Below, in pieces: positions 7,769-54,068 of a stretch of DNA of 64,000 nucleotides. Where the stretch lies: the IMG/VR virus record IMGVR_UViG_3300017528_000567, positions 1 through 64,000 of that record. One strand, given 5' to 3'. How positions within the stretch are numbered: position 1 is the stretch's first letter; each line of letters starts with the position of its first letter. Made by a program: the position numbers and the translations under genes. A model generated the notes under the pieces. That model saw only the letters and a program-made list of their open reading frames with translations, was not told the DNA's origin and did not search any database.

Positions 7769-7775
7769 GGTGTAA
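7769..7775 (+). promoter_or_regulatory. class-II motif GGTGTAA
   Basis: 8 nt before ATG 7784. Confidence 0.7.
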
Positions 7776-7783
7776 CAACCCAC

Positions 7784-8260
7784 ATGGATGACATTCGGCC
7801 GCTCGGGTCCGTAGAAGTTAGATGCGCTTACCCAGGATGCAACTGGAGCTTCTGGGTAGATTGCCTGGACCCAAGGCTGCCCGTCGGGCCGTTTGATTGC
7901 GGGGCCGACCACCAAACGCAAGCGCGAGTCAACGCTGCCCTAGAGAAGCTAGACAATGCCGGCCTGGTCTATCAAACAGCCGCGGGACCTGGCTGTGGTT
8001 GCGGAGGGCCGACCCAAAAATCCGGGTGCGAGCCGCCTCCCGCGCAACCCCCTACGATGACGACCGGGTATCTGATGCTACGGCTGCGCGAACCGGACTT
8101 TGATGGGAGTCAAGAGATGTGGGCCGCGGGTCGATTTGCGTGGGCGACTTGGGCCTCTCTCGGCGATCTTGAGGCGCTTCCGTGCGACGCCGGGGCCTAT
8201 CATTGGATGCCCCTTGATGAGGCGAGTCGTAACCGCCCAGCGGGTTACACAGGCCCTTGA
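7784..8260 (+). CDS. Cys-rich hypothetical protein
   Basis: ATG 8 nt after GGTGTAA; CAYPGC, DC, CGCGG motifs. Confidence 0.7.
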   Translation: MDDIRPLGSVEVRCAYPGCNWSFWVDCLDPRLPVGPFDCGADHQTQARVNAALEKLDNAGLVYQTAAGPGCGCGGPTQKSGCEPPPAQPPTMTTGYLMLRLREPDFDGSQEMWAAGRFAWATWASLGDLEALPCDAGAYHWMPLDEASRNRPAGYTGP

Positions 8261-8293
8261 GCCAAGAAAGCTCTTATCTGCTGCGCTCTGTGA

Positions 8294-8316
8294 AGGCACG
8301 GCTGAGGTCCGGCCTC
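8294..8316 (+). promoter_or_regulatory. conserved 5'-leader hairpin of an MRKIAN gene
   Basis: AGGCACGGC-TGAG-GTCCGGCCTC. Confidence 0.7.
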
Positions 8317-8337
8317 AACCCAAGGGAGCCTTGACCG

Positions 8338-9394: not shown

Positions 9395-9577
9395 TCATCG
9401 CTTGCGCTTCTTCGCTTGCGGCGTAGGCGCAAGCGACTCCATCCGTTCGGCACGCTCCACCAAAGCCTCTGCCACTGCGTCAGGTGGTAACCCGGTCAAT
9501 TCACCGAGCATCGCGAAATATGCCCCGTCAGGGAGGTCGTCGTCGACAATGAGTAGGGCCGTCGCGATGTCCATCAT
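9395..9577 (-). CDS. small hypothetical protein (DDDLPDGAYFAM)
   Basis: 60 aa; ATG 9 nt after GGTGTAG. Confidence 0.7.
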   Translation of the reverse strand: MMDIATALLIVDDDLPDGAYFAMLGELTGLPPDAVAEALVERAERMESLAPTPQAKKRKR

Positions 9578-9586
9578 GGGAAGGCT

Positions 9587-9593
9587 CTACACC
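9587..9593 (-). promoter_or_regulatory. class-II motif GGTGTAG
   Basis: 9 nt before ATG 9577. Confidence 0.7.
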
Positions 9594-9772
9594 GACACGC
9601 AGCCAGGCGTAAAGCCCAGGGGCTCAAGGTCAGCTGCCGATTCGCCACGTGGGCGCGACGCGGCTCATTCGCCGCGGGTTTTGGCCTCCTTTGCGAACGG
9701 CTTGAAGTTTCGCTCTGGCCAAGACGTATTTGCAGGAACCGCCTGATATCAGGAACGAGAGGGTCAGACGTC

Positions 9773-15013: not shown

Positions 15014-15052
15014 TAGGCGGGGCGTATCGATGCGCTAAAGTCTCGGCTAATT

Positions 15053-15059
15053 GGTGTAC
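15053..15059 (+). promoter_or_regulatory. class-II motif GGTGTAC
   Basis: 9 nt before ATG 15069. Confidence 0.65.
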
Positions 15060-15068
15060 TTACTAGGC

Positions 15069-15296
15069 ATGCAATTGACCGAACCAGAGACCGAAATTCT
15101 GCAGGCGTTCGCTGGGAAACCGTACGCTATCGCAGGCTTCCCCGAGGATTGTAAGGGTCCTATCGATGGCCTGATGGCCTACGGCTTGATCACCTGGAGT
15201 GGTCTCCAGAGACCGATCCCAGGCCAGGACGAGTCTTGGTGGCGTGTTCGCCTGACAGACCAGGGGCGTCGCTACGTTTTGGACGCGGGTTGGTAA
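15069..15296 (+). CDS. small hypothetical protein (winged-helix-like)
   Basis: 75 aa; LTEPETEIL...LMAYGLI...VRLTDQGR; ATG 9 nt after GGTGTAC. Confidence 0.65.
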   Translation: MQLTEPETEILQAFAGKPYAIAGFPEDCKGPIDGLMAYGLITWSGLQRPIPGQDESWWRVRLTDQGRRYVLDAGW

Positions 15297-15413: not shown

Positions 15414-15447
15414 ATACCGCAGAGCTCGCTCAAGGGGTCTGGCCGCT

Positions 15448-15454
15448 GGTGTAT
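15448..15454 (+). promoter_or_regulatory. class-II motif GGTGTAT
   Basis: 8 nt before ATG 15463. Confidence 0.7.
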
Positions 15455-15462
15455 GATCCGGC

Positions 15463-16116
15463 ATGCTCTACACCCAATTAGAAACCGACTTGGCCTTGGG
15501 GACGTTGGACGGAATCGTACGCCCAGAATCCCTAGAAAACGTACGTCAACACTACGAGGGGGATGGTCGCTATTATCACGACTTCGATCACGCGGTCGAG
15601 GTCGTGAGCTGGATCAACCGGGCTTGTGAGGACTATACAGAAGAAGCCCTCCACCCGTTCACGCATCAAGAGCTCCGCCTCGCGGCGCTCTTCCATGATG
15701 TGGTCTACACAGCCGCGGGGAGCCCTAGCAACGAACAGCAGAGCTGCGAGCTCATGCGCAACGAGTTGAAGGGGGTAGTTTCCGAGGATTCGTTGGCCCA
15801 GATTGGCCAGCTCATCATGCTCACCGCGCAGCACGGCAAACTTGGCGCCGGTGACGCGCCACTGGCAGGCTGCGTCCTTCTCGACGCCGACATCGCGAGC
15901 CTTGGGCAATATCACTGGGAAACGGTCGTGTACAACAACATGAATGTGGTCGCCGAGCTGCGTCTCAAGTACACGCCCGAGCAAGTGGCGCTGGGACGCA
16001 AAGCTTTCCTTGGTGGCTTGCTAGCAAAAAAGTCGATCTTCCTGTCGGAGTTCTTCCGAACCAGGCTCGAAGATCAGGCCCGCAGAAACATCACGAAGAT
16101 CTTGGCGAGCTCGTAG
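15463..16116 (+). CDS. HD-superfamily metal-dependent phosphohydrolase (COG4339-like)
   Basis: RYYHDFDH...ALFHDVVY...NEQQS...LLDADIASLG. Confidence 0.85.
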   Translation: MLYTQLETDLALGTLDGIVRPESLENVRQHYEGDGRYYHDFDHAVEVVSWINRACEDYTEEALHPFTHQELRLAALFHDVVYTAAGSPSNEQQSCELMRNELKGVVSEDSLAQIGQLIMLTAQHGKLGAGDAPLAGCVLLDADIASLGQYHWETVVYNNMNVVAELRLKYTPEQVALGRKAFLGGLLAKKSIFLSEFFRTRLEDQARRNITKILASS

Positions 16117-16126
16117 CCGACCCCAT

Positions 16127-16133
16127 GGTGTAG
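16127..16133 (+). promoter_or_regulatory. class-II motif GGTGTAG
   Basis: 8 nt before GTG 16142. Confidence 0.7.
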
Positions 16134-16141
16134 CCCCGTGA

Positions 16142-17239
16142 GTGAATTTCGATTGGAATCAATACACGGGGCAACTCAAGTGGCTCCCGGAGCGGACCAT
16201 CTATCTGACGCGGCACGGGTCGCACGCTTACGGCACCTCTTTGCCAACAAGCGACCTGGACCTCCGGGGGATCACCGTCGCTCCGATTCACTATTACCTC
16301 GGGATCAGCGAGACGTTCGAGCAGGCGGTACAAAACGAGCCGGTAGACCTCACTATTTTCGACCTACGAAAGTTCGTCAAGCTCGCGGCCGACGCCAATC
16401 CCAACGCCCTCGAGATCCTTTTCACCGACCCGAGCGACCATCTCGTGGTGCACCCGGTGATGCAGGTTCTGCTCGAAAATCGCGATGCGTTCCTTAGCCA
16501 GAAAGCCAAGCACACCTTCAGCGGTTACGCGAGGGCGCAGCTGCGCCGGATACAAGGCCACCACAGATGGCTGAAGTCCCCGCCAAAGGCGGCGCCAACG
16601 CGGCAGGAGTTTGGGCTCCCTGAACGCACCGTGATCCCCGCCGATCAACTCGCGGCAGCTCAAGCCGCTGTTACCAAGCAAGTCGATCAGTGGAGCTGGC
16701 ATGAGATGGAGCACCTGGACCCCGCCACACGGCAGGCGGTCCAGGACGAGTTCTTGCGCCGCCTTACCGAGATCACCCAGTGGAGCTGGGATCAAGTGGA
16801 CGCCAAGGTTTGGCTAGCCGCGAGTCGCGCGATCGGGCTCGATGATAATTTCATCCGGCTGCTAGACCTCGAGCGCCAGTACACAGGCCGTCTGAAGGAG
16901 TGGCAGCAGTACCAGGACTGGAAAAAGAACCGGAACCCGGCCCGCGCCGCCCTCGAAGAGAAGTACGGGTACGACTCGAAACACGCCATGCATCTGGTTC
17001 GGCTAACCAAGATGTGCCGGGAGCTCTTGACCGAAGGAGTGGTCCGGGTGCGTCGCCCCGATGCCGGGGAGCTACTCGAGATTCGCAATGGCGGTTGGAC
17101 ATACGAGCAACTACTGGAATACTCCGACCTCCAGGACGCCGCGCTCGGCGAGCTCGTGAAGGCTTCCACGCTCCCCAAGCAGCCTGACCGAAAGAAGCTC
17201 GACGAACTGTGCCTGACCATCATAGAGCGAATGGGGTAG
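16142..17239 (+). CDS. Pol-beta superfamily nucleotidyltransferase (RlaP/Nuc-transf-like)
   Basis: HGSHAYGTSLPTSDLDLRGI (GS..DxD); ANPNALEILF; GYDSKHAMHLVRL. Confidence 0.85.
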   Translation: MNFDWNQYTGQLKWLPERTIYLTRHGSHAYGTSLPTSDLDLRGITVAPIHYYLGISETFEQAVQNEPVDLTIFDLRKFVKLAADANPNALEILFTDPSDHLVVHPVMQVLLENRDAFLSQKAKHTFSGYARAQLRRIQGHHRWLKSPPKAAPTRQEFGLPERTVIPADQLAAAQAAVTKQVDQWSWHEMEHLDPATRQAVQDEFLRRLTEITQWSWDQVDAKVWLAASRAIGLDDNFIRLLDLERQYTGRLKEWQQYQDWKKNRNPARAALEEKYGYDSKHAMHLVRLTKMCRELLTEGVVRVRRPDAGELLEIRNGGWTYEQLLEYSDLQDAALGELVKASTLPKQPDRKKLDELCLTIIERMG

Positions 17240-17639: not shown

Positions 17640-18585
17640 ACTTGCTGACTTTGCTTTGAAAAAGTGAGTACGGATCGCTAGCCCCAAGTGCTGGATCGAA
17701 ACGCACGGAAAACCCAGCAGCCTTGGTATGACCTCCTCCACCCATGCTCTTACAGAAGGCCGCGCAGTCGAACGCGGAGTGGTTGGATCTGAGAGAGTAC
17801 CCAAGGGGGGCTTGTCCATCCACTATGGCAAAATAATCAAACCCTACAACGAGATCGGCTCCATCCTTCACTACTTCACAGGCATCGCTAGTAAGTTTCG
17901 TCCCCTGGAACATGACTACCCGTTTTCCGCCGGGGCTCGTGAAGTGGTAGGCGCCATCGAGAGCCTTGAGAATGGTCCCATGGTGCTGTTCTACCAGCCG
18001 CTGGCCCACCGACCGCCGAGCATCCCACCAAGGTTTGCGAGCCGCTGAGAACGGGGCGTAAACTAACCAGCTCTCCTGTGAGAAGAACCGGATACCTTCC
18101 GCTAGCTCGCATGCTTTGGGCCAGTCCGGGTCGTGCTTCTGCCAGGTGTCTCGAATCCCACTCAACCGGGCAATCTCTGCAGCGAACCGGACTTCATCGT
18201 CATGCGTGGATTTTAGATTCGTCATTGGAAGCCAGACGTGGCGGAAAGCCAGAACCGCTCCGCACACCCCTGGTTCAGTCACTTCATCCCCGAACACACC
18301 ACGCTCTCCGAATGCCTCAACAATGGGCTTAGCGCTCTTATGGTGGTCGAGGATGATGGCCCCCGCATCCACGAACTCCTGATAGCGCGATTCATGCGGA
18401 GAGAAGTCACAGAACAGCGTGTTCGGTTTGACCTCAAGTTTCTCTTGAGCAGCTCCGTACTGGCAAAACTGTATATTCGCGAGCGGTAATGCATCGTGCA
18501 GCAGCATCGCCGAGACAGTGCCGTCAGCACAGTTGTCGTGACATACGATATCAGTGACTTGAGTCAGGGCATCTAGATCTAACAC
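17617..18585 (-). CDS. DHH/DHHA1 phosphoesterase (NrnB-like oligoribonuclease)
   Basis: HDNCADG, FCDFS, ILDHHKS, GGGGHTKAAGF; GTG start after AAAGGAGG. Confidence 0.85.
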   Translation of the reverse strand: MLDLDALTQVTDIVCHDNCADGTVSAMLLHDALPLANIQFCQYGAAQEKLEVKPNTLFCDFSPHESRYQEFVDAGAIILDHHKSAKPIVEAFGERGVFGDEVTEPGVCGAVLAFRHVWLPMTNLKSTHDDEVRFAAEIARLSGIRDTWQKHDPDWPKACELAEGIRFFSQESWLVYAPFSAARKPWWDARRSVGQRLVEQHHGTILKALDGAYHFTSPGGKRVVMFQGTKLTSDACEVVKDGADLVVGFDYFAIVDGQAPLGYSLRSNHSAFDCAAFCKSMGGGGHTKAAGFSVRFDPALGASDPYSLFQSKVSKYEAATGV

Positions 18586-18617
18586 GTAGAGGCCTCCTTT
18601 CGGAGCCCCTACACCGA

Positions 18618-21120: not shown

Positions 21121-21641
21121 TCAGGATCCTTGAGCAATCGAAACAAGGTCGAGCTCTTTGGTGCGGCAAGTGCAGCACCGCTCGGCGCCCCAGCGGTCGG
21201 CGCCCCAGCGGTCGGGTGCCTTGTCGGCAGCGGGCTAAAGTGCCGTGGGATCTCCACAGAGCGAGCGGTCCGCCTATCTCGCGAGCCCAGATACACGACC
21301 GTGAGGCGGTCCCCGTACCCCAGACGCAGCTCGGGGTTGAGGTAGAGCGCGCCACCGATCTGAAAATCGTCCAGCTTCACCCAGTCTTGCAGCCGCGTCA
21401 GTTCCGTTCTGGCTCGCCAGACGTGGCCAAGACGCGTGAGACTACAAAATGGCAATGCAGCCGACGGCCACTCTCGCGGGGGGCTGCACCAGACCTCACA
21501 GGCGCCGGTCTGGTCAGCGTCCGACGGCAGTACCTCGGTGCGGCGATCCGCCGACTCGACAACGGCGGTCACGAGCTCGCGGTCTACCTTGCGGACCAGC
21601 CAGAGTAGCCCGCGCCACTGAATGAGGTCTCCTGCATCCAC
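21117..21641 (-). CDS. hypothetical protein
   Basis: GTG start 8 nt after GGTGTAT; ATGA overlap with the YkgJ gene. Confidence 0.7.
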   Translation of the reverse strand: MDAGDLIQWRGLLWLVRKVDRELVTAVVESADRRTEVLPSDADQTGACEVWCSPPREWPSAALPFCSLTRLGHVWRARTELTRLQDWVKLDDFQIGGALYLNPELRLGYGDRLTVVYLGSRDRRTARSVEIPRHFSPLPTRHPTAGAPTAGAPSGAALAAPKSSTLFRLLKDPE

Positions 21642-21649
21642 GGTCCCCA

Positions 21650-21656
21650 ATACACC
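21650..21656 (-). promoter_or_regulatory. class-II motif GGTGTAT
   Basis: 8 nt before GTG 21641. Confidence 0.65.
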
Positions 21657-21734
21657 GCGGCCACAAAAACAGAACGAGGGGGCCGATAACTACCGGTCCC
21701 CTCCAAAACCTCTCAAACCCCTCGTTCTTCGCTC

Positions 21735-24238: not shown

Positions 24239-25072
24239 TCAATGTCCCCGAATCACGGTCAACCCGCGATTTGTGTTCCGCTTCTTAGGTGCCAGAGACT
24301 TGTCGCCGGCATAGCAGTACTGGCAACCATAGAGGCAGGACTCGTTCAACGTGAAGGGGTCGACCATCGCGACACACTCGCACGACTCAAGCGCTAGCCC
24401 GCCACGTGAGAAATCAGAAGCCGGCACGCATGGGGCAAGGAGAAACTTCGCCCCTTGCCAATCATCAAAAGATCGGTCGTCCTTGCACAACATCACCTGA
24501 ATGCCAGCCGGCGCCGCAATCTCTGCCAGACGATTAAGGATCCCGAAGCGCTCGGAGCAACTGCGCGTCTCTGGGGTTGAATCGTTCGGCTGAAGAAATG
24601 AGACAAAGACCTCGCGGCGACCGGCCCGGTGGGCGTACTCCAGTAGGTACCTGAACCGCTCGAGAACCATCTGGGTAGACAGCAGCGGGATCGGGCTGAA
24701 TCGCCAGTGGACGTTACCGAAGGCCTTCACGGCCTCAACCAGCAGCCGCCCAGCTTCATTGATCGTGGGCGTCCCCTTTTCGACCTCGCGCCAACCAGTC
24801 GCTGTCATGTGAATCACAACGTTGTATCCCTTCAGCCTGAGTTGACTAGCGATCAGGTTGGTCGGGTTTTTCGTCCAGAAGACAAGCGCCAGGGTTTCCT
24901 CGGGGGCAAGGGACCAGACGCTAGGGGCGCCAGTCTTCGAATCGAACGCTATCATCTGCTCAGCGGCTAGGCAGCTCTCAAACCAACTCCACTTCGCCGC
25001 AGGAAGATCCGTATAACGAGAGAGGCTGTAAGGGACCGTCTCTACAACGCCGCTCCTAGGAGGTTTCGACAT
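24239..25072 (-). CDS. DUF1848 family protein (radical-SAM/spore-photoproduct-lyase-like)
   Basis: SLSRYTDLPA...WF...VFWTKNP...WRFSPI...CLYGCQYCYA. Confidence 0.8.
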   Translation of the reverse strand: MSKPPRSGVVETVPYSLSRYTDLPAAKWSWFESCLAAEQMIAFDSKTGAPSVWSLAPEETLALVFWTKNPTNLIASQLRLKGYNVVIHMTATGWREVEKGTPTINEAGRLLVEAVKAFGNVHWRFSPIPLLSTQMVLERFRYLLEYAHRAGRREVFVSFLQPNDSTPETRSCSERFGILNRLAEIAAPAGIQVMLCKDDRSFDDWQGAKFLLAPCVPASDFSRGGLALESCECVAMVDPFTLNESCLYGCQYCYAGDKSLAPKKRNTNRGLTVIRGH

Positions 25073-25080
25073 GGGACCTT

Positions 25081-25087
25081 CTACACC
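25081..25087 (-). promoter_or_regulatory. class-II motif GGTGTAG
   Basis: 8 nt before ATG 25072. Confidence 0.7.
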
Positions 25088-25104
25088 GGAAGCAATGACC
25101 GGAG

Positions 25105-25713: not shown

Positions 25714-26970
25714 TCATACCGTCGCGATGGGACTGCGCACTACGATACCACTGCCGGGCGTTTGAACCGCTTCCGCTGTGATGTGGATCTCCATGATATC
25801 CGAGTCATTGGGGGCTTCGTATGAATAGGGCTTAAGTACCCGTTTGAGGATGGTCCGCAGCGCCCGTGCACCCGTGGATTGCAACTTTGCAAGACGGGCG
25901 AGCTCGCGTAGCGCATCAGGCTCGAATCTGAGATCAATGCCATCCAAGAGGTACAGCGCTCGGAACTGCTTACAGAACGAGCTCCGCGGGGTCGTGAGGA
26001 TCTCGATCAGCTCTTCCTCCGTGAGCTCTAGCGTAGATGTCAACACCGGAAGCCGCCCAACTAGCTCTGGGATGAGTCCGAACTCTTGGACATCCTCGAC
26101 CGTCACCTCACGGTAGAGCTCGGTCTTGCTGTATTCGGCCCGCAGCTCGTTGCAGAACCCAAGACGGGCGCCCTTGTTGAGTCGCTGCGCAATCACATCC
26201 TCGATCCCTGCAAAAGAGCCGGCGCAGATGAAGAGGATGTTCGTGGTGTCGATCATATCCCTCTCGCGGGCGCCGGAATTGGGAGCGCGCCCTCGCGGAA
26301 TCGGGACCACCGAGCCCTCGATCAGCTTCAAGAGGGACTGCTGCACCCCTTCGCCGGAGACATCACGATAGCCAGAAGCGTTGCGCCCCGATTTGCGAGC
26401 CAGCTTGTCAATTTCGTCGATGAAGATGATCCCCCACTGAGCGCGCTCAACGTCATTGCCCGCAGCCGCCATCAACCCCTGGAGCAAGGACTCGACATCA
26501 TCCCCGACGTAGCCCGCCTGGGTTAGCCGGGTCGCATCGCCGACGTAGAACGGGACGTCAATCATCTTGGCGACCGCGCGTGCGATCGCTGTCTTTCCCG
26601 AGCCCGATGGACCCAGCATCAGAATGTTGCTTTTCTCTACCTCTACGGGCTCACCGTCAATCATGAGAGAGCCGCCCGCCCGTAGGATCTCTCGCCGCCG
26701 ATAGTGCTCATAGACGGCAATCGCCACTTCCTGCTTGGCAGCGTCCTGGCTGATCACGGTCTCTGAGATGCAGGCCGCTATCTCGCGGGGCTTCTTGAGA
26801 GGCTTGTCGTCAACTTTGTCGGCCGCGATGGACTTCGATAAGACATCGCCGATATTGGCGACGCACCGATCGCAAATGCAGGCGCTGTCAGCGTCCGCAG
26901 AGATGAGCTTCTTAACCTCGTTGCGCGGGCGATTGCAGAAATTGCAGCGTTTCTCTGAACGAGCCGGCAT
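25714..26970 (-). CDS. clpX: ATP-dependent Clp protease ATP-binding subunit ClpX homologue
   Basis: N-terminal C4 Zn finger (CNFC...CDRC), KSNILMLGPSGSGKT, GYVGDDVE, IFIDEIDK, RDVSGEGVQQ, LGF loop, GARALR. Confidence 0.95.
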   Translation of the reverse strand: MPARSEKRCNFCNRPRNEVKKLISADADSACICDRCVANIGDVLSKSIAADKVDDKPLKKPREIAACISETVISQDAAKQEVAIAVYEHYRRREILRAGGSLMIDGEPVEVEKSNILMLGPSGSGKTAIARAVAKMIDVPFYVGDATRLTQAGYVGDDVESLLQGLMAAAGNDVERAQWGIIFIDEIDKLARKSGRNASGYRDVSGEGVQQSLLKLIEGSVVPIPRGRAPNSGARERDMIDTTNILFICAGSFAGIEDVIAQRLNKGARLGFCNELRAEYSKTELYREVTVEDVQEFGLIPELVGRLPVLTSTLELTEEELIEILTTPRSSFCKQFRALYLLDGIDLRFEPDALRELARLAKLQSTGARALRTILKRVLKPYSYEAPNDSDIMEIHITAEAVQTPGSGIVVRSPIATV

Positions 26971-26978
26971 AGCCCTAG

Positions 26979-26985
26979 CTACACC
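26979..26985 (-). promoter_or_regulatory. class-II motif GGTGTAG
   Basis: 8 nt before the clpX ATG 26970. Confidence 0.7.
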
Positions 26986-26989
26986 GAGC

Positions 26990-29642: not shown

Positions 29643-30200
29643 CTACAAAGCTTTAACGCGCCCTAGGACCTGATCCCAGGTTCGCACACGGAAGCCCTCA
29701 CACTCTGTAAGGTGTTCTGTATTCGGCAAAGCCCACAAGAGACCAACGCCTTGAGGGTGATGCTGTTGCCACTTGATCACATTGATTGGCGAATCGTCGA
29801 CCAGCATGTCCCCAACAATCATGTGCTTGGCCCTAGTGTGAATAATCGAGTTGTGGTCGAACCCTAGCCTAGAGCTCAACCACTCCGTGCGTTCGTGGAC
29901 CCAGTGGCGGCTGTAACGAGGCGGACTCGTGACCGCTACGACCTCTGCGTGCCTACGGATGGCCTCGACGGCCTCCACTACGCCGGGGTACAGCTCGAGC
30001 GAAGCACAGCGGCCTTCTACAAAGAAATCCTCTTCAAATGCCCGGAACTGTTCTGCCGACAGCGTCAGGAACATGTCCCAATGCCTCAGCCTAGATAGTT
30101 CCAGGTCCACTCCGAACTGCTCCCGCACATACTGAATTGCGGGGGTGGCGAAATCACAGAGTACCTGGTCTACATCAACCAATACGCGTTTGGCTTTCAC
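29643..30200 (-). CDS. 5'(3')-deoxyribonucleotidase (NT5C, HAD superfamily)
   Basis: VLVDVDQVL (DxD), VTSP, EWL, LVDDSP. Confidence 0.85.
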   Translation of the reverse strand: MKAKRVLVDVDQVLCDFATPAIQYVREQFGVDLELSRLRHWDMFLTLSAEQFRAFEEDFFVEGRCASLELYPGVVEAVEAIRRHAEVVAVTSPPRYSRHWVHERTEWLSSRLGFDHNSIIHTRAKHMIVGDMLVDDSPINVIKWQQHHPQGVGLLWALPNTEHLTECEGFRVRTWDQVLGRVKAL

Positions 30201-30209
30201 GCGCCGGCT

Positions 30210-30216
30210 CTACACC
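30210..30216 (-). promoter_or_regulatory. class-II motif GGTGTAG
   Basis: 9 nt before GTG 30200. Confidence 0.7.
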
Positions 30217-30217
30217 G

Positions 30218-33228: not shown

Positions 33229-33237
33229 GCCGGCCAA

Positions 33238-33244
33238 TTACACC
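33238..33244 (-). promoter_or_regulatory. class-II motif GGTGTAA
   Basis: 9 nt before ATG 33228, just after a terminator. Confidence 0.7.
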
Positions 33245-33250
33245 AGAAAC

Positions 33251-33673: not shown

Positions 33674-33850
33674 TCAAGCGTCGGAGGTAGTCTCGATGGT
33701 CGTGTCGCAGTCCGGGCCTGTGACTTCCTCTCCGGTCGTCTGACCGAGACGCTCTGTCAACTTGTAGACTTCCTTGCAGTCACTGCCCTCGCGGTCGAGG
33801 ACCTCTGTGACTATCGTGCCGTCTCTCATAATAGTGGTCTTACCCTTCAT
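33674..33850 (-). CDS. DUF2997-like small protein (missing from the ORF track)
   Basis: Translated by hand: MKGKTTIMRDGTIVTEVLDREGSDCKEVYKLTERLGQTTGEEVTGPDCDTTIETTSDA; AAGGA SD. Confidence 0.7.
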   Translation of the reverse strand: MKGKTTIMRDGTIVTEVLDREGSDCKEVYKLTERLGQTTGEEVTGPDCDTTIETTSDA

Positions 33851-33906
33851 GAGGCGCTTCCTTAGGTGATGGATCTGGTGCGGACGGCATCAGCTACACC
33901 AACGGC

Positions 33907-40856: not shown

Positions 40857-42612
40857 TGGCTCGGCTCCTAAGGCTGTTGGCTAGGTCAACCGTGAAGTTC
40901 GAGCTGCGGTCAAAGTCCAAGGCTCCGACCGCAGACTCACCAAGGACCTTGTCTATGAGGTCCTTTTTCTTCTGAAGAATCTCGAGCGTGTAGTGGTCGA
41001 TGGTTTTGCGCTGCTTCTCCGTGCTGCGTGGGCGCTCGGCTACAAGGTGCAGCGCGATCACGTGTTGGTGCGGCGAGCCGATACGAATTGGCCGGCCAAG
41101 CAGCTGCACGTAGTTGCCCCAACTCCACGGGGCGTTGTAGAAGATCATGGCTGACGCCGCCTGGAGGTTGATCGCCTCCGAGCCTGCGTCGGAGATGAAG
41201 ATCACCCGTACACTGGATTTCAGGTCCTGAAACGCATCCTGTGCTTTTTTGCGCGCCGGGTTGCTCTTCGTATCCGTGACCTTGCCGCTCACCTCTACAC
41301 TCTCGATCCCGGCCCTTTTGCAGATGTCGCGCAGGCGAGTGATCAGAGACGTGAAGCGGCAGTAGACGATGACTTTCTCATCGCTGAACTCTTCAGTCAG
41401 CAGATCGAGCAAGGCTTGCTCCTTGGCGCCCAAGGCGCGGACTTCCGTTTCCTCGCCGCTGACAACGTCGAGCTCGATCAAGTCTCCCGCGTCGTACTTG
41501 AGCAGAGACATCGAATCGACGGTCTTTTGACAGTAAATCAGCGCGACAAGGGTCTTGTTGTCAGAGTAGTCCTTGAGATTGCCGTCGCCCAAGGCGAGCA
41601 TGCCGGACAAGGCCTCGCTGTACTTTGCGTCCTCAGCGGCCGAGAGCTCGCACGCGACCTCCCGAGTGATGAGCGTCGGCAGCTCGCTCGAGATCTCGTG
41701 CTTGGGTCGGCCCAAGAAGAATGGATCAATCCGGTCGCGGAAGGCCTGCAGGTTCTTGTAGCCTACGACGATCGGGATCTTCCGTGACCCGGCTACGCTC
41801 TGCAGTCTCGTGACGCAGTACTCGCGAAGGAAGGCCGACTTGGTCGTGAAGACCTGCGAGTAGATCACCTTGTAGATCGAGAACCCTTCGATCAGGTTGT
41901 TCTTCAGCAGCGTGGCGGTTAGCCCATAACAACGACTCGCTCGGTCGGACAGCTCTTTGCAGACCTGCCATGTCTTGGTGCGGTCGCTCTTGAATGCCGT
42001 CGCTTCATCGAAGGCAATGGTGAGGTGCGGGATGCGAGCCGTGATCCCGTCGAGGGTCCCACGGACAGGTGGCACCTTCGGGTCTGGCTTGCCTTTGATC
42101 AAAGGTGAGGGCTTTGCCCCTTGATGCCAGTCTCGCACAAGGGGCGCGTACCCCATCAGCATCACCGGCTTCGTGGGTCCCTTGTGCAGGGCGAACTCTA
42201 GATACGTTTGCTTGCGCTCGTTTGGCGTCCCGTCGACAACGTATGTGGTGATGCCCGTGGTGAACTTCTCGATCTCGGAACACCATTGGCGAAGTGCCGA
42301 CTTCGGGCACACCACAATGACCTTGTTGTCGGGCTCTTTTTCCCACGTGTAACAAAGGGATGCGATCAAGACGAGAGTCTTGCCTGTGCCCGTGGCATCG
42401 CCGAGCACCATCCGCTTCATACTCAGCAGGTGGAAGATTGCCTGGACCTGGTAATACCTGATCGAGAGTGGCTGCAGCGTGCCATCCAGGACTTGGATCT
42501 CCTGGCGCAGCATCCCGATTGGCTTGAGCGTTACGTCTTTGCTAGCGCGGACCTTTTTGAGGGTTTCATAGACCTTGGCGTGCTTGGAGGTGGTGTCTTC
42601 AGAGGCTGCCAT
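40840..42612 (-). CDS. SNF2-family (SF2) helicase/ATPase
   Basis: DATGTGKT, VVCPKS, DEAT, LTATLLKN, KVIVY, GSEAINLQAA, QLLGRPIRIG. Confidence 0.92.
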   Translation of the reverse strand: MAASEDTTSKHAKVYETLKKVRASKDVTLKPIGMLRQEIQVLDGTLQPLSIRYYQVQAIFHLLSMKRMVLGDATGTGKTLVLIASLCYTWEKEPDNKVIVVCPKSALRQWCSEIEKFTTGITTYVVDGTPNERKQTYLEFALHKGPTKPVMLMGYAPLVRDWHQGAKPSPLIKGKPDPKVPPVRGTLDGITARIPHLTIAFDEATAFKSDRTKTWQVCKELSDRASRCYGLTATLLKNNLIEGFSIYKVIYSQVFTTKSAFLREYCVTRLQSVAGSRKIPIVVGYKNLQAFRDRIDPFFLGRPKHEISSELPTLITREVACELSAAEDAKYSEALSGMLALGDGNLKDYSDNKTLVALIYCQKTVDSMSLLKYDAGDLIELDVVSGEETEVRALGAKEQALLDLLTEEFSDEKVIVYCRFTSLITRLRDICKRAGIESVEVSGKVTDTKSNPARKKAQDAFQDLKSSVRVIFISDAGSEAINLQAASAMIFYNAPWSWGNYVQLLGRPIRIGSPHQHVIALHLVAERPRSTEKQRKTIDHYTLEILQKKKDLIDKVLGESAVGALDFDRSSNFTVDLANSLRSRANDSSQ

Positions 42613-42621
42613 CGTGGGCAG

Positions 42622-42628
42622 CTACACC
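42622..42628 (-). promoter_or_regulatory. class-II motif GGTGTAG heading the replication operon
   Basis: 9 nt before ATG 42612. Confidence 0.7.
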
Positions 42629-42637
42629 ACCAACCCA

Positions 42638-47029: not shown

Positions 47030-47085
47030 TTGATGTAATCCTTCATGTCACTTAACTTGAAACTTGATAGGGAGTTTCTAAGAAA

Positions 47086-47115: not shown

Positions 47116-47155
47116 CATCAACATCCCTCTACACCGATGGCGCTACCGCACTCGC

Positions 47156-50676: not shown

Positions 50677-50710
50677 ATATCAACGGCTCCAGGCTATTGC
50701 CGGGCTAGCG

Positions 50711-53332
50711 CTAGTTGGCTCGCTTGTTCAAAAGAAGTCCCTTGACCCTAAACACACTCGCAGTCGTGCTACTCGTAGTGGCGCTCTCACTGTCGAAAAA
50801 GACACCGTTTGTTTCGTCAAACAGGGCGTATCGAATGAGTAGGATGATCACTAGCTGTCCGCGACGTCCCAAGGGCTCAGTGTCACTCGTCAGCTCCGCC
50901 AAAATGGCGAGCACATTCTTGTGCCGATCCGAGTTGCTCAAGTCTTGAGCATAGGCGTTGGGCACATACGCCCCCAATGGCACTGAGGTGAAGTAGCTTC
51001 GGCCCTCGACGTCGATATCCCCAAGGCCTCGTTGGAACGTCAACGATTCTGGACTAGCGACCATTGAAATATACGTGGGCAGGCAGAGCATGCCCGTAGA
51101 GGCATCGAAATTGGCGACGCTGATCTCAGGGCTCGCGGCGAGCTCTGCCTCACCGTCAAAGTCACCGACCACGGGCGGAAAGATGCCGCCGGTCTGCAGG
51201 TACGCAGTTGGGAAAGGATATGCCTCACCCTGCGAGCCGGAACCAGCTGTTAGGCTTATCAGTTTGCCGGAGACCAGCTTCGGAACAACAGTCAGGCTGA
51301 TGCCAGCGATAGCGCCCCGGGCCATCTGAGGCGCGGCGGCACGGAAGTAAATTGACAGCTGCGGGGTGACCGCAGGGGTGGTCAGCCGCGGTATCGGCCG
51401 CCTCGCCTTATACTTCACAGTGATCTGGACGGGAGTGGCTGGAGTGTTGACGTTGAACGTAACGATTCGCCCGCTGGGGTCCAAGGCTCCGGCTGTTGCC
51501 GACGCGACCGGAGCTGTCGAGACCGAGATGAGCTCGATCGCTCGCTCAGGCAGTGTCATTTTGTTAGTGACTATCGCGTTCCCCTGCGTATAGGTCAGTT
51601 CAAGCGTCTGATACTCGACCTGCACTTCACGGTGGGGCTCATCGAAGCTTTTGAGCCCAGGATTATCGAAGACAGCGTTATCGCAGAAGATCGGTGTTGT
51701 AGAAGGCAGCGGCGCGGTAGTGAGCTCGAAGCTGTCTACCCCATAGGTCTCAACAGGGGTATGGGTCAACCCCACTCCACGCGGGTACGCTACCAGCAGC
51801 GTCACGTACAAACTCTCGTCGGTAAGACCAAGAGGGGCAACGGTGCCGGCGATTGTGATGACCACAGGAGCAACAGGCGCCGACCCAAGCCCCGTAATAG
51901 AGATATGCGGCTCTGCATTCGCTGCCTTGTGTGACTCCGAAGGACCCGCCCAGTGAGCCTCGACCACATCCAAGAACAAAGAACCGTCTGGCGCTAAGCT
52001 GCTCCAGTCGAATGCCGCGTACGGATACACAAGCAGAGACGTTGGACCAATCGTCACCACGCTACCAGCGACCCAACCTCCACCGGGAGCCGGGTATCTT
52101 AGCGTGACCGTCTCATAGATAGAGCGATCGGAGAATCGGCGCCTCACCGCATCGAATTGCTGAATCTCAGCAGCGGGAACCGCCGGTGTCTGAGTGCCCC
52201 CTATCTCATTCGCAACGAATACCGTTGTGCCGTGAGATCCGCCCCCTGCCAAATTGTCAGTGATCTCGGTGCGCAACGAATTGTCGAGGATCGCGTTCGT
52301 GTTCTTCTCAAGAACCTCTTCCAATGACCAACCAGTCGGCGACACACCGTGTCTCAGATCTAGTAGGTCTGCGGCTGCAATGATGTTGTTGAACAGACCA
52401 TCGGGGCGATCAGATGTGCCTGGACTTGCCGCGCCGCCGTTCTGATTGGTTGCACGGTTGAAGGGCGCGGTATTACGGCGGAAGACCGCCAATAGCGGGA
52501 TCGCGTACATGTAGCCATCAACGGTCCCCAGACCGTTGGTCGGGACGCCATCTCCAGCTCTCCAGAGTCCGGTATCACCGTTTGCCCATTGATTCGTGTA
52601 GTTGGGTTCGAGCCCAGGATAGGCGCTGCCATCCGGGGTCGTCGGGTTAGGAGGCACCGTGCGGGCCACCACGTTGAAGTCGTCGATACCGGATGGGTAA
52701 GTGAACACGTCCACATCGGCAATCGCTCGCAACCGATATTGGATCTGCACCCGTTTCGTGGTTTCAACTCCGACGTTGACGTTCAGAATATCGTCATCGA
52801 AGTTGTAGGTTGCGTCGTCAGCTCCAGGAGCGATCTTGACGTTACCATTGAACCAAATCCTGCCTGTTGGGCTCTTGCCAGTCATGTTGGCAGGAGCTGG
52901 CGACGCCGGTGACGCCGGGATCAGTCTCCGCCACACCTCAAGAATCACTAGGTTAGTTTGCTGTCCTCCCCCGGGGCCAGCGCTGAGATTGACACGGTTG
53001 GCAGTAGTCGCGCTATTGGTGCGTTGGATGGGGATAAACCAGCCGTTCACGTGCGCCAACAACGGCGGGATCTCGATCGTGTTGGCCACATTGATCGGAG
53101 CAAAGATGGCGCCGGTCGAGCTCGACGTGGTCAGGAAGTCATCAGATAACCAACCGGACGGCATCAAGCGCCGCACAGCGGCTTGTGCCGCCCCGCCGTC
53201 AATGTCCTGACTGAGGTTTAGCTCGATGTCCAGGAGGGGCTTGCCAGCCTGAGTGACAACAGTTTCCCATGCGTGCTGATCCGGAACCAGATACCCAGAG
53301 ACGGCAGGCCCGTAGTTCTTATCCGCGGTCAT
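50711..53332 (-). CDS. virion tail/baseplate-associated protein
   Basis: 873 aa; N-terminal QAGKPLLDIELNLSQ resembles tail-fibre attachment (DUF4815-like) starts. Confidence 0.7.
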   Translation of the reverse strand: MTADKNYGPAVSGYLVPDQHAWETVVTQAGKPLLDIELNLSQDIDGGAAQAAVRRLMPSGWLSDDFLTTSSSTGAIFAPINVANTIEIPPLLAHVNGWFIPIQRTNSATTANRVNLSAGPGGGQQTNLVILEVWRRLIPASPASPAPANMTGKSPTGRIWFNGNVKIAPGADDATYNFDDDILNVNVGVETTKRVQIQYRLRAIADVDVFTYPSGIDDFNVVARTVPPNPTTPDGSAYPGLEPNYTNQWANGDTGLWRAGDGVPTNGLGTVDGYMYAIPLLAVFRRNTAPFNRATNQNGGAASPGTSDRPDGLFNNIIAAADLLDLRHGVSPTGWSLEEVLEKNTNAILDNSLRTEITDNLAGGGSHGTTVFVANEIGGTQTPAVPAAEIQQFDAVRRRFSDRSIYETVTLRYPAPGGGWVAGSVVTIGPTSLLVYPYAAFDWSSLAPDGSLFLDVVEAHWAGPSESHKAANAEPHISITGLGSAPVAPVVITIAGTVAPLGLTDESLYVTLLVAYPRGVGLTHTPVETYGVDSFELTTAPLPSTTPIFCDNAVFDNPGLKSFDEPHREVQVEYQTLELTYTQGNAIVTNKMTLPERAIELISVSTAPVASATAGALDPSGRIVTFNVNTPATPVQITVKYKARRPIPRLTTPAVTPQLSIYFRAAAPQMARGAIAGISLTVVPKLVSGKLISLTAGSGSQGEAYPFPTAYLQTGGIFPPVVGDFDGEAELAASPEISVANFDASTGMLCLPTYISMVASPESLTFQRGLGDIDVEGRSYFTSVPLGAYVPNAYAQDLSNSDRHKNVLAILAELTSDTEPLGRRGQLVIILLIRYALFDETNGVFFDSESATTSSTTASVFRVKGLLLNKRAN

Positions 53333-53368
53333 GATATCCTTTGATGTAAGTCTTCATCATCCCATCCA

Positions 53369-54016
53369 TCAGAAGGTCAACCGCCACACGATACTAAGGG
53401 TGCTTGTAGCCGGCTTGTTGATGACTGCGAACGTCAAATAGTTTATCAGCGTGTCATGCAGGGTCAGATCAACGGTGGGGTCGTACTGCCCATTGGAGGG
53501 ACTGACTGGCTTACGAACGGCTAGGTTTGTGTCGATGTTGCCGCCCAAGAGCCCCATCTCAACCAGAGGGCCGACCGCCTCGGACTCTGCAAAAGTCGTC
53601 GTGAAATCGACCACGTTTGTTGGGATGGCACTCGGGACACCGTCGCCATCGATGAACTTGGTATCCGCAAAAGTCTTGCGAGCGATCTCCGAGTACAGCG
53701 AGCGCTGTGTATTGGTCGCCGCTGGAGGGCTCTGAAGGGACCAGCCAGTGTCGCCTGTGCCAACGGCAAGAGCATAAATCCCATGCGGCGGCTCAAGACT
53801 GTCCTTCATGAGCCGAGCGATGAGAATCGATGCGTCCAAGACAACCAGGTTCCGCAGCTCGCGCTCCAGCTGGATCACCCCGGTCTCGCCATCTCTCATC
53901 GTGAAGAAGACATCACCGCGGATATAGTTTTTGCCAAAGGTCTCTTGGCAGGCAGCTCTTACGGCAAAGCCCGGAGCTCGCTCTTGGGCTCTGGGTAAGG
54001 TCTCGACACTTCGCAT
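53369..54016 (-). CDS. tail-collar/fibre attachment-like protein
   Basis: RNLVV...LAVGTG...SLYSEIARK...TTTFAESEAVGPLVEMGLLGG...INKPATSTLSIVWRLTF. Confidence 0.75.
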   Translation of the reverse strand: MRSVETLPRAQERAPGFAVRAACQETFGKNYIRGDVFFTMRDGETGVIQLERELRNLVVLDASILIARLMKDSLEPPHGIYALAVGTGDTGWSLQSPPAATNTQRSLYSEIARKTFADTKFIDGDGVPSAIPTNVVDFTTTFAESEAVGPLVEMGLLGGNIDTNLAVRKPVSPSNGQYDPTVDLTLHDTLINYLTFAVINKPATSTLSIVWRLTF

Positions 54017-54068
54017 CTGATCTCCCTCTTGTGCAGACAGCTACACCAGCAGCCATCGCATAAGAGGG

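What the first reader, a model, noticed from the sequence alone, without database searches (positions are those of the whole stretch)
7769..54047. Class-II single-box motif YGGTGTAN placed 8-9 nt before 11 start codons
Seen: GGTGTA(G/A/T/C), preceded by a pyrimidine in every case checked, sits 8-9 nt upstream of the starts at 7784, 9577, 15069, 15463, 16142, 21641, 25072, 26970 (clpX), 30200, 33228 (AAA) and 42612 (SNF2, head of the replication operon). Three more copies sit 23-43 nt upstream with an SD in between (18585, 33850, 54016). I found no shared -35 element. A rough chance expectation for this hexamer at two offsets over ~70 genes is well below one. Known: T4 late promoters are single -10 boxes read by a phage sigma. 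Inference: a phage-specific middle promoter giving leaderless mRNAs. An unusual ribosome-binding motif is the alternative. The motif also corrects several start calls.
Basis: partly seen in the sequence, partly recalled or inferred. Interest (0 to 1): 0.7.

Follow-up and report, generated by a model that had tools for sequence, protein, structure and literature searches.

The report
Single-box promoter making leaderless phage mRNAs
An 8-base signal (YGGTGTAR) lies 9-10 bases before many genes of a roughly 430-kb soil phage and its relatives; it is most likely a minimal promoter, probably read by the phage's own sigma factors, that starts transcription at the start codon, so these genes are made as mRNAs with no leader and no ribosome-binding site.

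Summary
In the window, GGTGTA is followed by ATG/GTG at 9-10 nt 14 times, against 0.94±0.91 in shuffles. In the whole 255-kb record it is the only one of 4096 hexamers enriched at that offset (32/91, P=4e-17). It is also the top hexamer in two relatives of different GC content: G001 (63/225) and the complete 398-kb G007 (57/217). The consensus is Y-GGTGTA-R with no -35 box.

It behaves as a promoter, not a ribosome-binding site:
- Orthologues keep the box but switch between "10 nt, no SD" and "20-60 nt with a canonical SD in between".
- Back-to-back box pairs fill 35-40-bp divergent intergenic regions.
- Some boxes directly follow terminators.
- Starts are ATG or GTG, almost never TTG, with a pyrimidine at -1.
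- Sites cluster in the nucleotide-metabolism, replication and tRNA modules and avoid the structural block.

No RNA data exist, so transcription start sites are inferred. Complete relatives lack an RNA polymerase, and the clade carries divergent ECF-like sigma genes. The closest known analogue is the single-element AATGTA promoter of phage phiEco32 sigma gp36. I file this as a new variant of a known kind.

The parts
7768..7786 (+). CGGTGTAA box, 9-nt spacer, ATG 7784 (158-aa protein of unknown function)
   Evidence: no Pfam or PHROG hit
9575..9594 (-). CGGTGTAG box, 10-nt spacer, ATG 9577 (60-aa ORF); it sits in a divergent region opposite a class-I-like box at 9702
15052..15071 (+). TGGTGTAC box, 10-nt spacer, ATG 15069 (75 aa)
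15447..15465 (+). TGGTGTAT box, 9-nt spacer, ATG 15463 (217-aa HD-type phosphohydrolase)
16126..16144 (+). TGGTGTAG box, 9-nt spacer, GTG 16142 (365-aa RlaP-like nucleotidyltransferase)
   Evidence: the G001 orthologue starts at the same residue but has an SD-like stretch (AGAGAG) and no box
21639..21657 (-). CGGTGTAT box, 9-nt spacer, GTG 21641 (174 aa); a hairpin plus T-run terminator ends 7 nt upstream of the box
25070..25088 (-). CGGTGTAG box, 9-nt spacer, ATG 25072 (277-aa DUF1848 protein)
   Evidence: box and 9-nt spacing are conserved in G001
26968..26986 (-). CGGTGTAG box, 9-nt spacer, ATG 26970 (418-aa ClpX-like ATPase)
   Evidence: box and 9-nt spacing are conserved in G001
30198..30217 (-). 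CGGTGTAG box, 10-nt spacer, GTG 30200 (185-aa NT5C 5'-nucleotidase)
33226..33245 (-). TGGTGTAA box, 10-nt spacer, ATG 33228 (516-aa AAA ATPase); a terminator hairpin plus T-run lies directly upstream
   Evidence: the box is conserved before all five orthologues, with 10-11 nt and no SD, or 23/32 nt with an SD
42610..42629 (-). TGGTGTAG box, 10-nt spacer, ATG 42612 (590-aa SNF2 helicase, first gene of the block SNF2 - DnaB - PolA)
   Evidence: the G001 orthologue keeps the box, with a 62-nt leader carrying an SD
18583..18616 (-). CGGTGTAG box 24 nt before GTG 18585, with AGGAGG in between (short-leader form)
33848..33901 (-). TGGTGTAG box 44 nt before ATG 33850, with AAGGAA in between (leadered form)
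54014..54048 (-). TGGTGTAG box 25 nt before ATG 54016, with GGGAG in between (short-leader form)
5788..5822 (.). Face-to-face palindromic pair of boxes (TGGTGTAG on both strands) centred on CATG. The - strand copy is 10 nt before ATG 5805 (42-aa ORF); the + strand copy opens only 8 codons.
47129..47136 (-). CGGTGTAG box in the intergenic gap upstream of the 1463-aa gene (ATG 47029); a candidate promoter with a leader of about 90 nt

Best explanation
YGGTGTAR is a -35-less, single-element promoter. It plays the role of a -10 region, with the TGTA core at about -13 to -9. Host RNA polymerase core is directed to it by a specialised sigma factor. The most likely readers are the phage's own divergent ECF-like sigmas: the tandem genes at record positions 241112-240147 and 240117-239284, outside the window. 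Transcription starts 9-11 nt after the box, on the A or G of the start codon or 1-2 nt before it. About a third of all copies therefore give leaderless mRNAs that need no Shine-Dalgarno sequence. A smaller set give short leaders consisting of little more than an SD. The class drives nucleotide-metabolism, replication, chaperone/ATPase, DNA-modification and tRNA-region genes and is nearly absent from the virion block, so it behaves as an early/middle temporal class. Shown here: motif, spacing, conservation, context and the presence of sigma-like genes. Inferred: the start-site position, the identity of the reading sigma and the timing.
For: (1) Position. GGTGTA is uniquely enriched 9-10 nt before ATG/GTG in three genomes of 48-59% GC: G000 32/91, P=4e-17; G001 63/225, P=2e-25; complete G007 57/217, P=4e-23. 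The window has 14 such copies against 0.94 in shuffles.
(2) Two modes with one box. Besides the 9-10-nt mode there is an SD-containing mode, mostly 17-25 nt, 2.4-4x over permuted hexamers, with the same Y/R flanks.
(3) Orthologues switch mode while keeping the box. AAA ATPase: 10-11 nt without SD in three phages, 23 and 32 nt with AGGAG/GGGAG in the others. SNF2: 10 nt becomes a 62-nt leader. ClpX, DUF1848 and the methyltransferase-like gene keep 9 nt.
(4) Divergent back-to-back pairs (TACACC-N3..11-GGTGTA) number 11 in G001 against 2.4 expected, and 12 in G007 (N7-55) against 1.7. Several have CAT/ATG 9-10 nt out on both sides, so the whole region between two divergent start codons is about 35-40 bp and holds nothing else conserved.
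(5) Boxes lie directly after hairpin+T-run terminators at 33244, 21656, record 195150, and G001 152866 and 171094.
(6) Start-site-like context. The base before the start codon is a pyrimidine in 106/138 leaderless-type sites against 52/108 SD-led starts (P=4e-6). Start codons are ATG 101, GTG 23, TTG 3.
(7) Module bias. Sites cluster at 5-43 kb and 178-250 kb and are nearly absent from the structural block at 43-178 kb.
(8) Machinery. No RNA polymerase genes are found in the record, and no beta-subunit domain in two complete relatives. Sigma-like genes are conserved in the clade. The ORF B family matches M. tuberculosis SigH at E=3e-4. Both models have ECF sigmas and phiEco32 gp36 as their top, though weak, fold matches.
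(9) Precedent. phiEco32 gp36 reads a single element tAATGTAtA (core AATGTA centred at -11.5) and starts 6-8 bp downstream, without a -35 box (PMC8948821, PMC12276001). This is the same TGTA core and the same geometry.
Against: - No transcript 5' ends are available. The only RNA run holds a 213-nt contig of a relative.
- The reading factor is not identified. The sigma candidates have no significant sequence similarity to gp36.
- Both sigma candidates appear to carry a C-terminal sigma-4-like domain, which a -35-less promoter does not need.
- The sigma operon itself lies about 750 nt downstream of a box in six of seven relatives. It also has its own TTGAC(A/G)-N16/17-GTA(G/C) element. These sigmas could therefore be products of the class rather than its readers.
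- Terminator adjacency is anecdotal, not statistically enriched.
- Half of the copies in each genome fit neither mode, and some of them are surely chance.
Confidence: 0.75

Rival explanations
1. The box is a promoter, but it is read by the host holoenzyme (a host sigma, possibly remodelled by a phage appropriator such as the 208-aa sigma-region-4 protein) and not by the phage's own sigma factors. The phage sigmas would then be products of this class that switch on later genes.
For: A box pointing at the sigma operon lies about 750 nt upstream of it in six of seven relatives. The sigma operon promoter-like element TTGAC(A/G)-N16/17-GTA(G/C) shares the GTA(G/C) core with the box. This suggests one -10 reader used with or without a -35 box. 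A sigma-4-only protein is encoded at record 163955-164581.
Against: The box has no T at the position equivalent to -7 and no TATAAT-like downstream element, so a housekeeping sigma would be unusual. The same box is kept in phages of 44-59% GC, which probably infect different hosts; this fits a phage-borne reader better.
Confidence: 0.2
2. The box acts in the mRNA as an unusual ribosome-binding or translation-enhancer site. It would pair with 16S rRNA or bind a phage-modified ribosome at a fixed distance from the start codon.
For: The distance to the start codon is fixed. There is no SD in the 9-10-nt spacer. GGUG can pair with the CACC next to the anti-SD (general knowledge of the 16S 3' end).
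Against: At most 4 nt can pair, while the conserved Y, U, A and R are unexplained. The GGUG lies 11-12 nt from the start, whereas this phage's own GGAGG-type SDs lie 4-9 nt away. The same box occurs 17-77 nt upstream with a normal SD in between, also in orthologues. In 35-40-bp divergent regions the mRNA would have to start inside the opposite gene. Start codons are nearly all ATG or GTG (TTG 3 of 127) with a pyrimidine at -1. No phage S21 or IF3 was found. The host 16S itself could not be examined.
Confidence: 0.06
3. The box marks an RNA processing or stability site, where a phage or host endonuclease trims polycistronic RNA to give mature 5' ends near the start codon.
For: Several copies directly follow tRNA genes, where processing occurs. 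Nearly all genes are co-directional, so long precursors are plausible.
Against: Back-to-back divergent pairs and copies directly after terminators have no obvious precursor. No conserved RNA structure or extra sequence surrounds the box. There is no Rfam match. I know of no precedent for an 8-nt site that is cut 10 nt downstream.
Confidence: 0.04
4. The box is a DNA site for something other than initiation: an operator of a regulator, or a methyltransferase target. Methyltransferase-type genes follow the sigma pair: an N6_N4_Mtase and an MT-A70 gene in relative L070, and a 532-aa homologue of the former in this record.
For: Some copies form palindromic pairs (5789/5816, 15448/15469, several in G007). 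N6/N4 and MT-A70 methyltransferase genes sit next to the sigma genes in a relative.
Against: Most copies are single and asymmetric. Strict orientation with the gene and 9-10-nt phasing to the start codon are not expected of a methylation target. An operator would still need a promoter, and no other conserved element is present.
Confidence: 0.04

Closest known systems
Single-element middle/late promoters of coliphage phiEco32, read by its sigma gp36 (tAATGTAtA; core AATGTA centred at -11.5)
   Same: One short conserved element with no -35 box. The TGTA core is shared and preceded by two purines (AA there, GG here). The start lies 6-8 bp after the 9-bp element, which is 8-10 nt after the A of GTA; this matches the 9-10 nt to the start codon here. 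The polymerase is host core plus a small, very divergent phage sigma (PMC8948821, PMC12276001).
   Different: The sequence is GG, not AA, with flanks Y and R. The candidate sigmas show no significant sequence similarity to gp36 and seem to keep a sigma-4-like domain. No gp79-like partner is known here. The phiEco32 papers read (PMC8948821, PMC12276001) do not describe its transcripts as leaderless, whereas here the start codon is placed at the predicted start site. The phage is a ~400-450-kb soil phage, not a 77-kb podovirus.
[quoted passage not shown]
   Same: A -10-type box at a fixed short distance before the start codon, no SD, and a second gene class with a normal GGAG SD (PMC12340547; the phiYS40 point is from my own knowledge of Sevostyanova et al. 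2007, which could not be opened).
   Different: Those boxes are TANNNT, read by the housekeeping sigma. Here the box is GGTGTA with no T at -7 and is phage-clade specific.
T4 late promoters (TATAAATA, gp55/gp33/gp45)
   Same: A single -10-region box read by a phage sigma-like protein on host core.
   Different: The sequence is unrelated. No gp55-like protein was identified, and dependence on a sliding clamp is unknown. T4 late mRNAs have leaders.
ECF sigma promoters (-35 AAC motif plus -10 CGT/GTC motif)
   Same: The candidate sigmas are ECF-like by profile and fold. A second class in this window (TTGAAG-N17-GTCTT) looks like an ECF promoter.
   Different: The class studied here has no -35 element.
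Promoters of the non-virion RNA polymerases of jumbo phages (AR9 AACA-N6-TW, phiKZ late TATG)
   Same: Very short single-box promoters in giant phages (PMC5312081, PMC7598289).
   Different: Those are read by phage multisubunit polymerases. This clade has no polymerase genes, even in complete genomes.

Membership tests
phiEco32 gp36-type single-element promoter | One conserved element in the -10 region and no -35 element | tested here: met
   The logo of 31 sites carries information only at Y-GGTGTA-G/R and none from -50 to -2. The same holds in G001 and G007.
phiEco32 gp36-type single-element promoter | Element sequence tAATGTAtA / AATGTA | tested here: inconclusive
   TGTA is shared and the two preceding bases are purines in both, but GG replaces AA and the flanks differ.
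phiEco32 gp36-type single-element promoter | Transcription starts 6-8 bp downstream of the element | not testable with these tools
   No usable RNA data. The geometry fits if the start is at the start codon: 9-10 nt after the A of GTA.
phiEco32 gp36-type single-element promoter | Read by a sigma homologous to gp36 | tested here: not met
   hhalign of both sigma-like families against gp36 gives probability below 1%. gp36 (9m7y_F) appears only as a weak fold match.
Housekeeping sigma-70 promoter (incl. extended -10) | TANNNT -10 hexamer with conserved T at -7; TTGACA -35 or TGn at -15/-14 | tested here: not met
   No T preference four bases after the A (index 3: A23 C29 G32 T27 of 111). No -35 element.
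ECF sigma promoter | Bipartite: -35 with AAC-type motif plus -10 | tested here: not met
   No upstream element.
T4-type late promoter | TATAAATA at -10; gp55/gp33 homologues | tested here: not met
   The sequence differs. The search for gp55/gp33 homologues was not run.
Shine-Dalgarno / ribosome-binding site | Complementary to the 16S 3' end and 4-10 nt from the start | tested here: not met
   Only GGUG could pair, at 11-12 nt. The phage's own SDs are GGAGG/AGGAG/AAGGA at 4-9 nt. An SD lies between box and start in the second mode. The host 16S is unavailable.
Leaderless gene architecture (-10 box adjacent to ORF) | Box at a fixed distance from the start codon, no SD, purine-initial start codon | tested here: met
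   Spacer 9 (19), 10 (8), 8 or 11 (4) of 31. ATG 101, GTG 23, TTG 3. Pyrimidine at -1 in 77%.
Leaderless gene architecture (-10 box adjacent to ORF) | Primary 5' end at the start codon | not testable with these tools
   No RNA run holds this phage.
Sigma-70 family (the candidate readers) | Sigma region 2 domain (and region 4) | tested here: inconclusive
   The G001 homologue passes the Pfam Sigma70_r2 cut-off (29.6 bits). The record's own ORF A scores 11.9 bits and ORF B has no hit. The ORF B family profile hits SigH 5zx2_F at E=3e-4. Fold matches to ECF sigmas rank first but are weak (E 0.04-0.4).

The most novel reading that the evidence does not exclude
A whole clade of ~400-450-kb soil and compost phages would run its early/middle programme (replication, nucleotide metabolism, chaperones, DNA modification, a ~38-gene tRNA region, and its own sigma operon) from an 8-bp -35-less promoter. 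Its own ECF-like sigmas would read that promoter. The promoter is placed so that transcription begins on the start codon. This would be a self-contained, feed-forward expression system that bypasses both the host's promoter code and its Shine-Dalgarno code. It would imply hosts that translate leaderless mRNA efficiently.
Probability: 0.4. Interest if true: 0.75.

Novelty: new variant of a known kind. Interest (0 to 1): 0.6.

Why it matters
- Gene-finding value. The signal pins start codons in huge-phage genomes, where standard gene callers assume an SD. In this window it moves several starts (7784, 21641, 26970, 33228).
- Regulatory map. It gives these genomes, whose proteins are mostly unannotatable, a first map of temporal classes, divergent promoters and terminator-promoter junctions.
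- Biology. If confirmed, it extends the rare phiEco32-type single-element sigma promoter to giant phages and couples it with leaderless translation. That narrows the possible hosts.
- Engineering. It offers a compact orthogonal sigma/promoter pair.

Tried and rejected
- RNA evidence. Two run searches found only DNA metagenomes and one compost metatranscriptome. That run holds a 213-nt contig at about 89% identity to the capsid-like gene, so no 5' ends could be read.
- Complex prediction. The job with the two sigma-like proteins and box DNA was not folded by the tool and gives no evidence.
- Host. No 16S in the record. The ClpX scan of bacterial genomes gave only 33%-identical hits in unrelated MAGs.
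- Terminator adjacency. Clear examples exist, but there is no significant enrichment.
- SD spacing without gene calls. The histogram was swamped by codon periodicity. I relied instead on curated upstream regions. My home-made gene caller mis-sets many starts, so I avoided statistics that depend on it.
- Late-promoter search in the structural block was inconclusive.
- Literature. A search for the hexamer found nothing relevant. The huge-phage survey paper does not describe such a promoter. The phiYS40 paper could not be opened.
- Rejected readings. T7-like or multisubunit phage polymerase promoter: no such genes. Repeat element or MITE: no conservation beyond 8 nt. Known RNA family: none. Phage S21 or IF3 acting on ribosomes: none found.

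Full report
**What the window is.** The 64-kb window is the first quarter of a 255,478-bp IMG/VR virus record (CheckV 54% complete, GC 0.59), found in soil and rhizosphere metagenomes. From 17 kb onward almost all genes are on the - strand. Recognisable genes in the window:
- HD phosphohydrolase, RlaP-like nucleotidyltransferase, DUF1848 protein, ClpX-like ATPase, NT5C nucleotidase, AAA ATPase;
- SNF2 helicase, DnaB-like helicase, family-A DNA polymerase;
- a run of very large proteins without family matches.

Further along the record lie the portal, protease, a capsid-like protein and the large terminase, about 38 tRNA genes at 200-231 kb, and three sigma-related genes (below). Two relatives are complete genomes with terminal repeats, 398,071 and 411,618 bp. 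The identical sigma gene of this phage also sits on a 433,843-bp contig. This is therefore a 'huge phage' of roughly 400-450 kb.

GGTGTA occurs 27 times in the window, against 14.3±3.6 expected. In the whole record 32 of 91 copies are so placed, against a 5.8% background. No other of the 4096 hexamers approaches this (P=4e-17; next best 1.5e-4). A logo of 31 sites carries information only at Y(-1) (29/31), GGTGTA and G(+1) (19/31). Nothing is conserved between -50 and -2, so there is no -35 box. The spacer is 9 nt in 19 sites, 10 nt in 8, and 8 or 11 nt in 4. The three distal copies with an SD in between are also real.

**The starts implied by the box are credible.**
- The ClpX zinc-finger domain begins at residue 7 of the 26970 start.
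- tblastn alignments to orthologues in a relative begin at residues 1-7.

**The signal is a property of a phage clade.** Orthologues of the AAA ATPase and of a sigma-like gene retrieved relatives with 28-65% protein identity and 44-59% GC.
- In the 312-kb relative G001, GGTGTA is again the top hexamer at this offset (63/225, P=2e-25). Flanks are Y in 56/59 sites and G in 55/59.
- In the complete 398-kb G007 (GC 0.48) it is again the top hexamer (57/217, P=4e-23). Flanks are Y in 42/49 and R in 42/49.
- Total copy numbers exceed a second-order Markov expectation: 91 vs 70, 225 vs 98 and 217 vs 159.

**Promoter or ribosome-binding site? Seven lines favour a promoter that starts about 10 nt after the box.**

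1. *A second arrangement.* The same 8-mer lies mostly 17-25 nt before the start, with a canonical SD exactly in between. Such a transcript would start about 10 nt after the box and would consist of an SD, a spacer and the start codon. This mode is 2.4-4 times more frequent than for permuted hexamers and carries the same flanks.

2. *Orthologues keep the box but change mode.*
   - AAA ATPase: 10-11 nt and no SD in this phage, L005 and L009; 23 nt with AGGAG in L006/L007; 32 nt with GGGAG in L008.
   - SNF2: 10 nt here, a 62-nt SD-bearing leader in G001.
   - ClpX, DUF1848 and the methyltransferase-like gene next to the sigma genes: 9 nt in both genomes.

   A ribosome-binding element cannot work from 23-62 nt away with another SD downstream of it. 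A promoter can.

3. *Divergent back-to-back pairs are strongly over-represented.* G001 has 11 against 2.4 expected, with no convergent pairs. G007 has 12 against 1.7. In several G001 cases a CAT and an ATG lie 9-10 nt outside the two boxes. The entire region between two divergent start codons is then about 35-40 bp and holds nothing but the two boxes. Each gene needs a promoter, and the boxes are the only candidates.

4. *Some boxes directly follow strong hairpin+T-run terminators* (33244 and 21656 in the window, record 195150, G001 152866 and 171094). This is a classical terminator-promoter junction. It is anecdotal and not statistically enriched.

5. *The start codons look like transcription start sites.* The preceding base is a pyrimidine in 106 of 138 sites (C in 76), against 52 of 108 SD-led starts (P=4e-6). 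The codon is ATG (101) or GTG (23) and almost never TTG (3). This fits the known preference of bacterial RNA polymerase for a pyrimidine at -1 and a purine at +1 (general knowledge).

6. *The anti-SD explanation fails on its own terms.* Only GGUG could pair with the CACC next to the anti-SD. The conserved Y, U, A and R are unexplained. That GGUG lies 11-12 nt from the start, while the phage's ordinary SDs (GGAGG, AGGAG, GGGAG, AAGGA) lie 4-9 nt away. The host 16S itself is unknown, so this argument rests on the phage's own SD usage. No phage S21 or IF3 gene was found in five genomes of the clade.

7. *The sites are modular.* They cluster at 5-43 kb and 178-250 kb (nucleotide and DNA metabolism, ATPases, tRNA region, DNA modification). 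They are almost absent from the 43-178-kb virion block. This is the pattern expected of a temporal promoter class.

**What cannot be shown.** No transcription start site is available.

**Who reads the box.**
- The record has no T7-type or multisubunit RNA polymerase genes. Neither of the two complete relatives has an RNAP beta-subunit domain (PF00562). Host core polymerase must therefore be used.
- G001 encodes three proteins with sigma-70 region 2.
- The record encodes homologues of the tandem pair, outside the window, at 241112-240147 (321 aa, 'ORF A') and 240117-239284 (277 aa, 'ORF B'), with 28-31% identity.
- Both families are confined to large metagenomic contigs. Some members are annotated as sigma-24 by JGI.
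- A profile of the ORF B family matches M. tuberculosis ECF sigma SigH at E=3e-4.
- AlphaFold models (pLDDT 78 and 87) have ECF sigma chains and phiEco32 gp36 as their best fold matches. These matches are weak, with E of 0.04-0.8.
- A third gene, at record 163955-164581, encodes a 208-aa protein with only sigma region 4.

The phage thus has the means to re-programme host core polymerase, but which factor reads the box is not established. Two observations cut both ways:
- A box pointing at the sigma operon lies about 750 nt upstream of it in six of seven relatives.
- In seven relatives the operon has its own element, TTGAC(A/G)-N16/17-GTA(G/C), 70-110 nt upstream of ORF A.

This element shares the GTA(G/C) core with the box. 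The sigmas could be auto-activated readers. Alternatively they could be products of a class read by something else. The complex-prediction job with sigma proteins and box DNA was not folded by the tool.

**Comparison with what is known.** The closest system is phiEco32. Its middle and late promoters consist of a single element tAATGTAtA (core AATGTA centred at -11.5) without a -35 box. They are read by the divergent phage sigma gp36 on host core and start 6-8 bp downstream (PMC8948821, PMC12276001). In the gp36 open complex, -14A and -13A are contacted through N7. This atom is also present in G (general chemistry). T-12 closes the duplex and G-11 is the first unpaired base. The present box, RR-TGTA with GG instead of AA, has the same core. 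If the start codon is the start site, the geometry is also the same: 8-10 nt between the A of GTA and +1.

Membership in that family is not shown:
- the candidate sigmas have no significant similarity to gp36;
- they seem to keep a sigma-4-like domain;
- no gp79 counterpart is known.

The second known theme is the '-10 box adjacent to the ORF' architecture of leaderless genes in Deinococcus-Thermus (PMC12340547), in Actinobacteria, and in Thermus phage phiYS40. The Actinobacteria and phiYS40 points are from my own knowledge, because the paper could not be opened. There the box is TANNNT, read by the housekeeping sigma. Here no T is conserved at the -7 equivalent. T4 late promoters, ECF promoters and the short promoters of jumbo-phage polymerases resemble it in one feature each, and each fails a defining one (see the membership table).

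**Novelty.** The huge-phage survey paper mentions sigma factors but describes no such promoter or leaderless design. The literature search for the hexamer found nothing relevant. I therefore rate this a new variant of a known kind. It is a single-element phage promoter of the phiEco32 type, with a new sequence, in a clade of giant soil phages, and systematically fused to start codons so that the transcripts are leaderless.

**Verdict.**
- Observation: confirmed.
It still needs 5'-end mapping.
- Confidence: about 0.75 that the box is a promoter initiating at or within 2 nt of the start codon; about 0.5 that one of the phage's own sigma-like proteins reads it.

Noticed in passing
window 2928-2964, 6106-6142, 11556-11592, 13214-13250 (+) and 4850-4886 (-): A second, two-box promoter-like class: TTGAAG(TTT)-N17-GTCT(T), always exactly 34 nt from the T of TTGAAG to an ATG/GTG. 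The ORFs opened are 155, 148, 536, 67 and 71 aa. It is also leaderless by geometry and looks like an ECF (RpoE-type) promoter. A variant lies at record 228539 (-). It was not found in G001 with the same pattern.
   Followed up: partly
record 241112-239284 (-), i.e. L014:785-2613, outside the window: Tandem genes for two very divergent ECF-like sigma factors (321 and 277 aa). They are conserved with the same neighbours in all relatives examined. In the relative L070 the following genes are an N6_N4 methyltransferase (533 aa) and an MT-A70 gene; in this record the following gene (532 aa, start 237482) is its homologue.
   Followed up: partly
record ~241190-241215 (-) and the equivalent place in L043, L044, L045, L047, L048 and L070: A conserved TTGAC(A/G)-N16/17-GTA(G/C) element (GTCTAC in L047) lies 70-110 nt upstream of the first sigma gene. 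It is a canonical -35 box joined to the same GTA core as the single-box motif. It may be the early promoter of the sigma operon.
   Followed up: partly
record 241120-241850 (L014:2620-3350): About 700 nt of apparently non-coding, lower-GC sequence rich in CAAC/CAA-type direct repeats. It lies between a divergent pair of boxes and the sigma genes. A similarly long gap with no gene called on the sigma-gene strand (only a 36-aa ORF on the opposite strand) precedes the sigma gene in a relative (L070). No Rfam match. It could be a long regulated leader, an origin or a genome end.
   Followed up: no
record 163955-164581 (-), L001:1174-1800: A 208-aa protein with a clear sigma-70 region 4 at residues 52-100, a weaker second region-4-like stretch, and no region 2. 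It lies next to a 5'-3' exonuclease gene. It may be an appropriator or half of a split sigma.
   Followed up: partly
record 200-231 kb (L037-L039): About 38 tRNA genes in clusters interleaved with small ORFs. Several small ORFs have the box starting 2-3 nt after a tRNA 3' end (record 206362, 207579, 210685).
   Followed up: partly
window 47030-47045 and 53333-53355 (- strand): The upstream regions of two very large, probably structural genes (starts 47029 and 53332) share the stretch TTACATCAA close to the start codon. This is a possible late-class signal.
   Followed up: no
window 5788-5822 and 15447-15475: Face-to-face palindromic box pairs (GGTGTA-N21-TACACC over a central CATG, and GGTGTA-N15-TACACC). 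Similar N19-N21 pairs occur in G007. They may be interleaved divergent promoters or a binding site for a dimeric regulator.
   Followed up: partly
window 300-344 (- strand): A box (CGGTGTAG at 337-345) is followed at once by a perfect GC-rich hairpin (ATTGGGCGG...CCGCCCAAT). Its meaning is unclear; it may be a terminator for the opposite direction or a structured 5' end.
   Followed up: no
record 142814-143695 (L034:18814-19695): A compost metatranscriptome (run X15) holds a 213-nt contig about 89% identical to the capsid-like gene. Relatives of this phage are therefore transcriptionally active in compost.
   Followed up: partly
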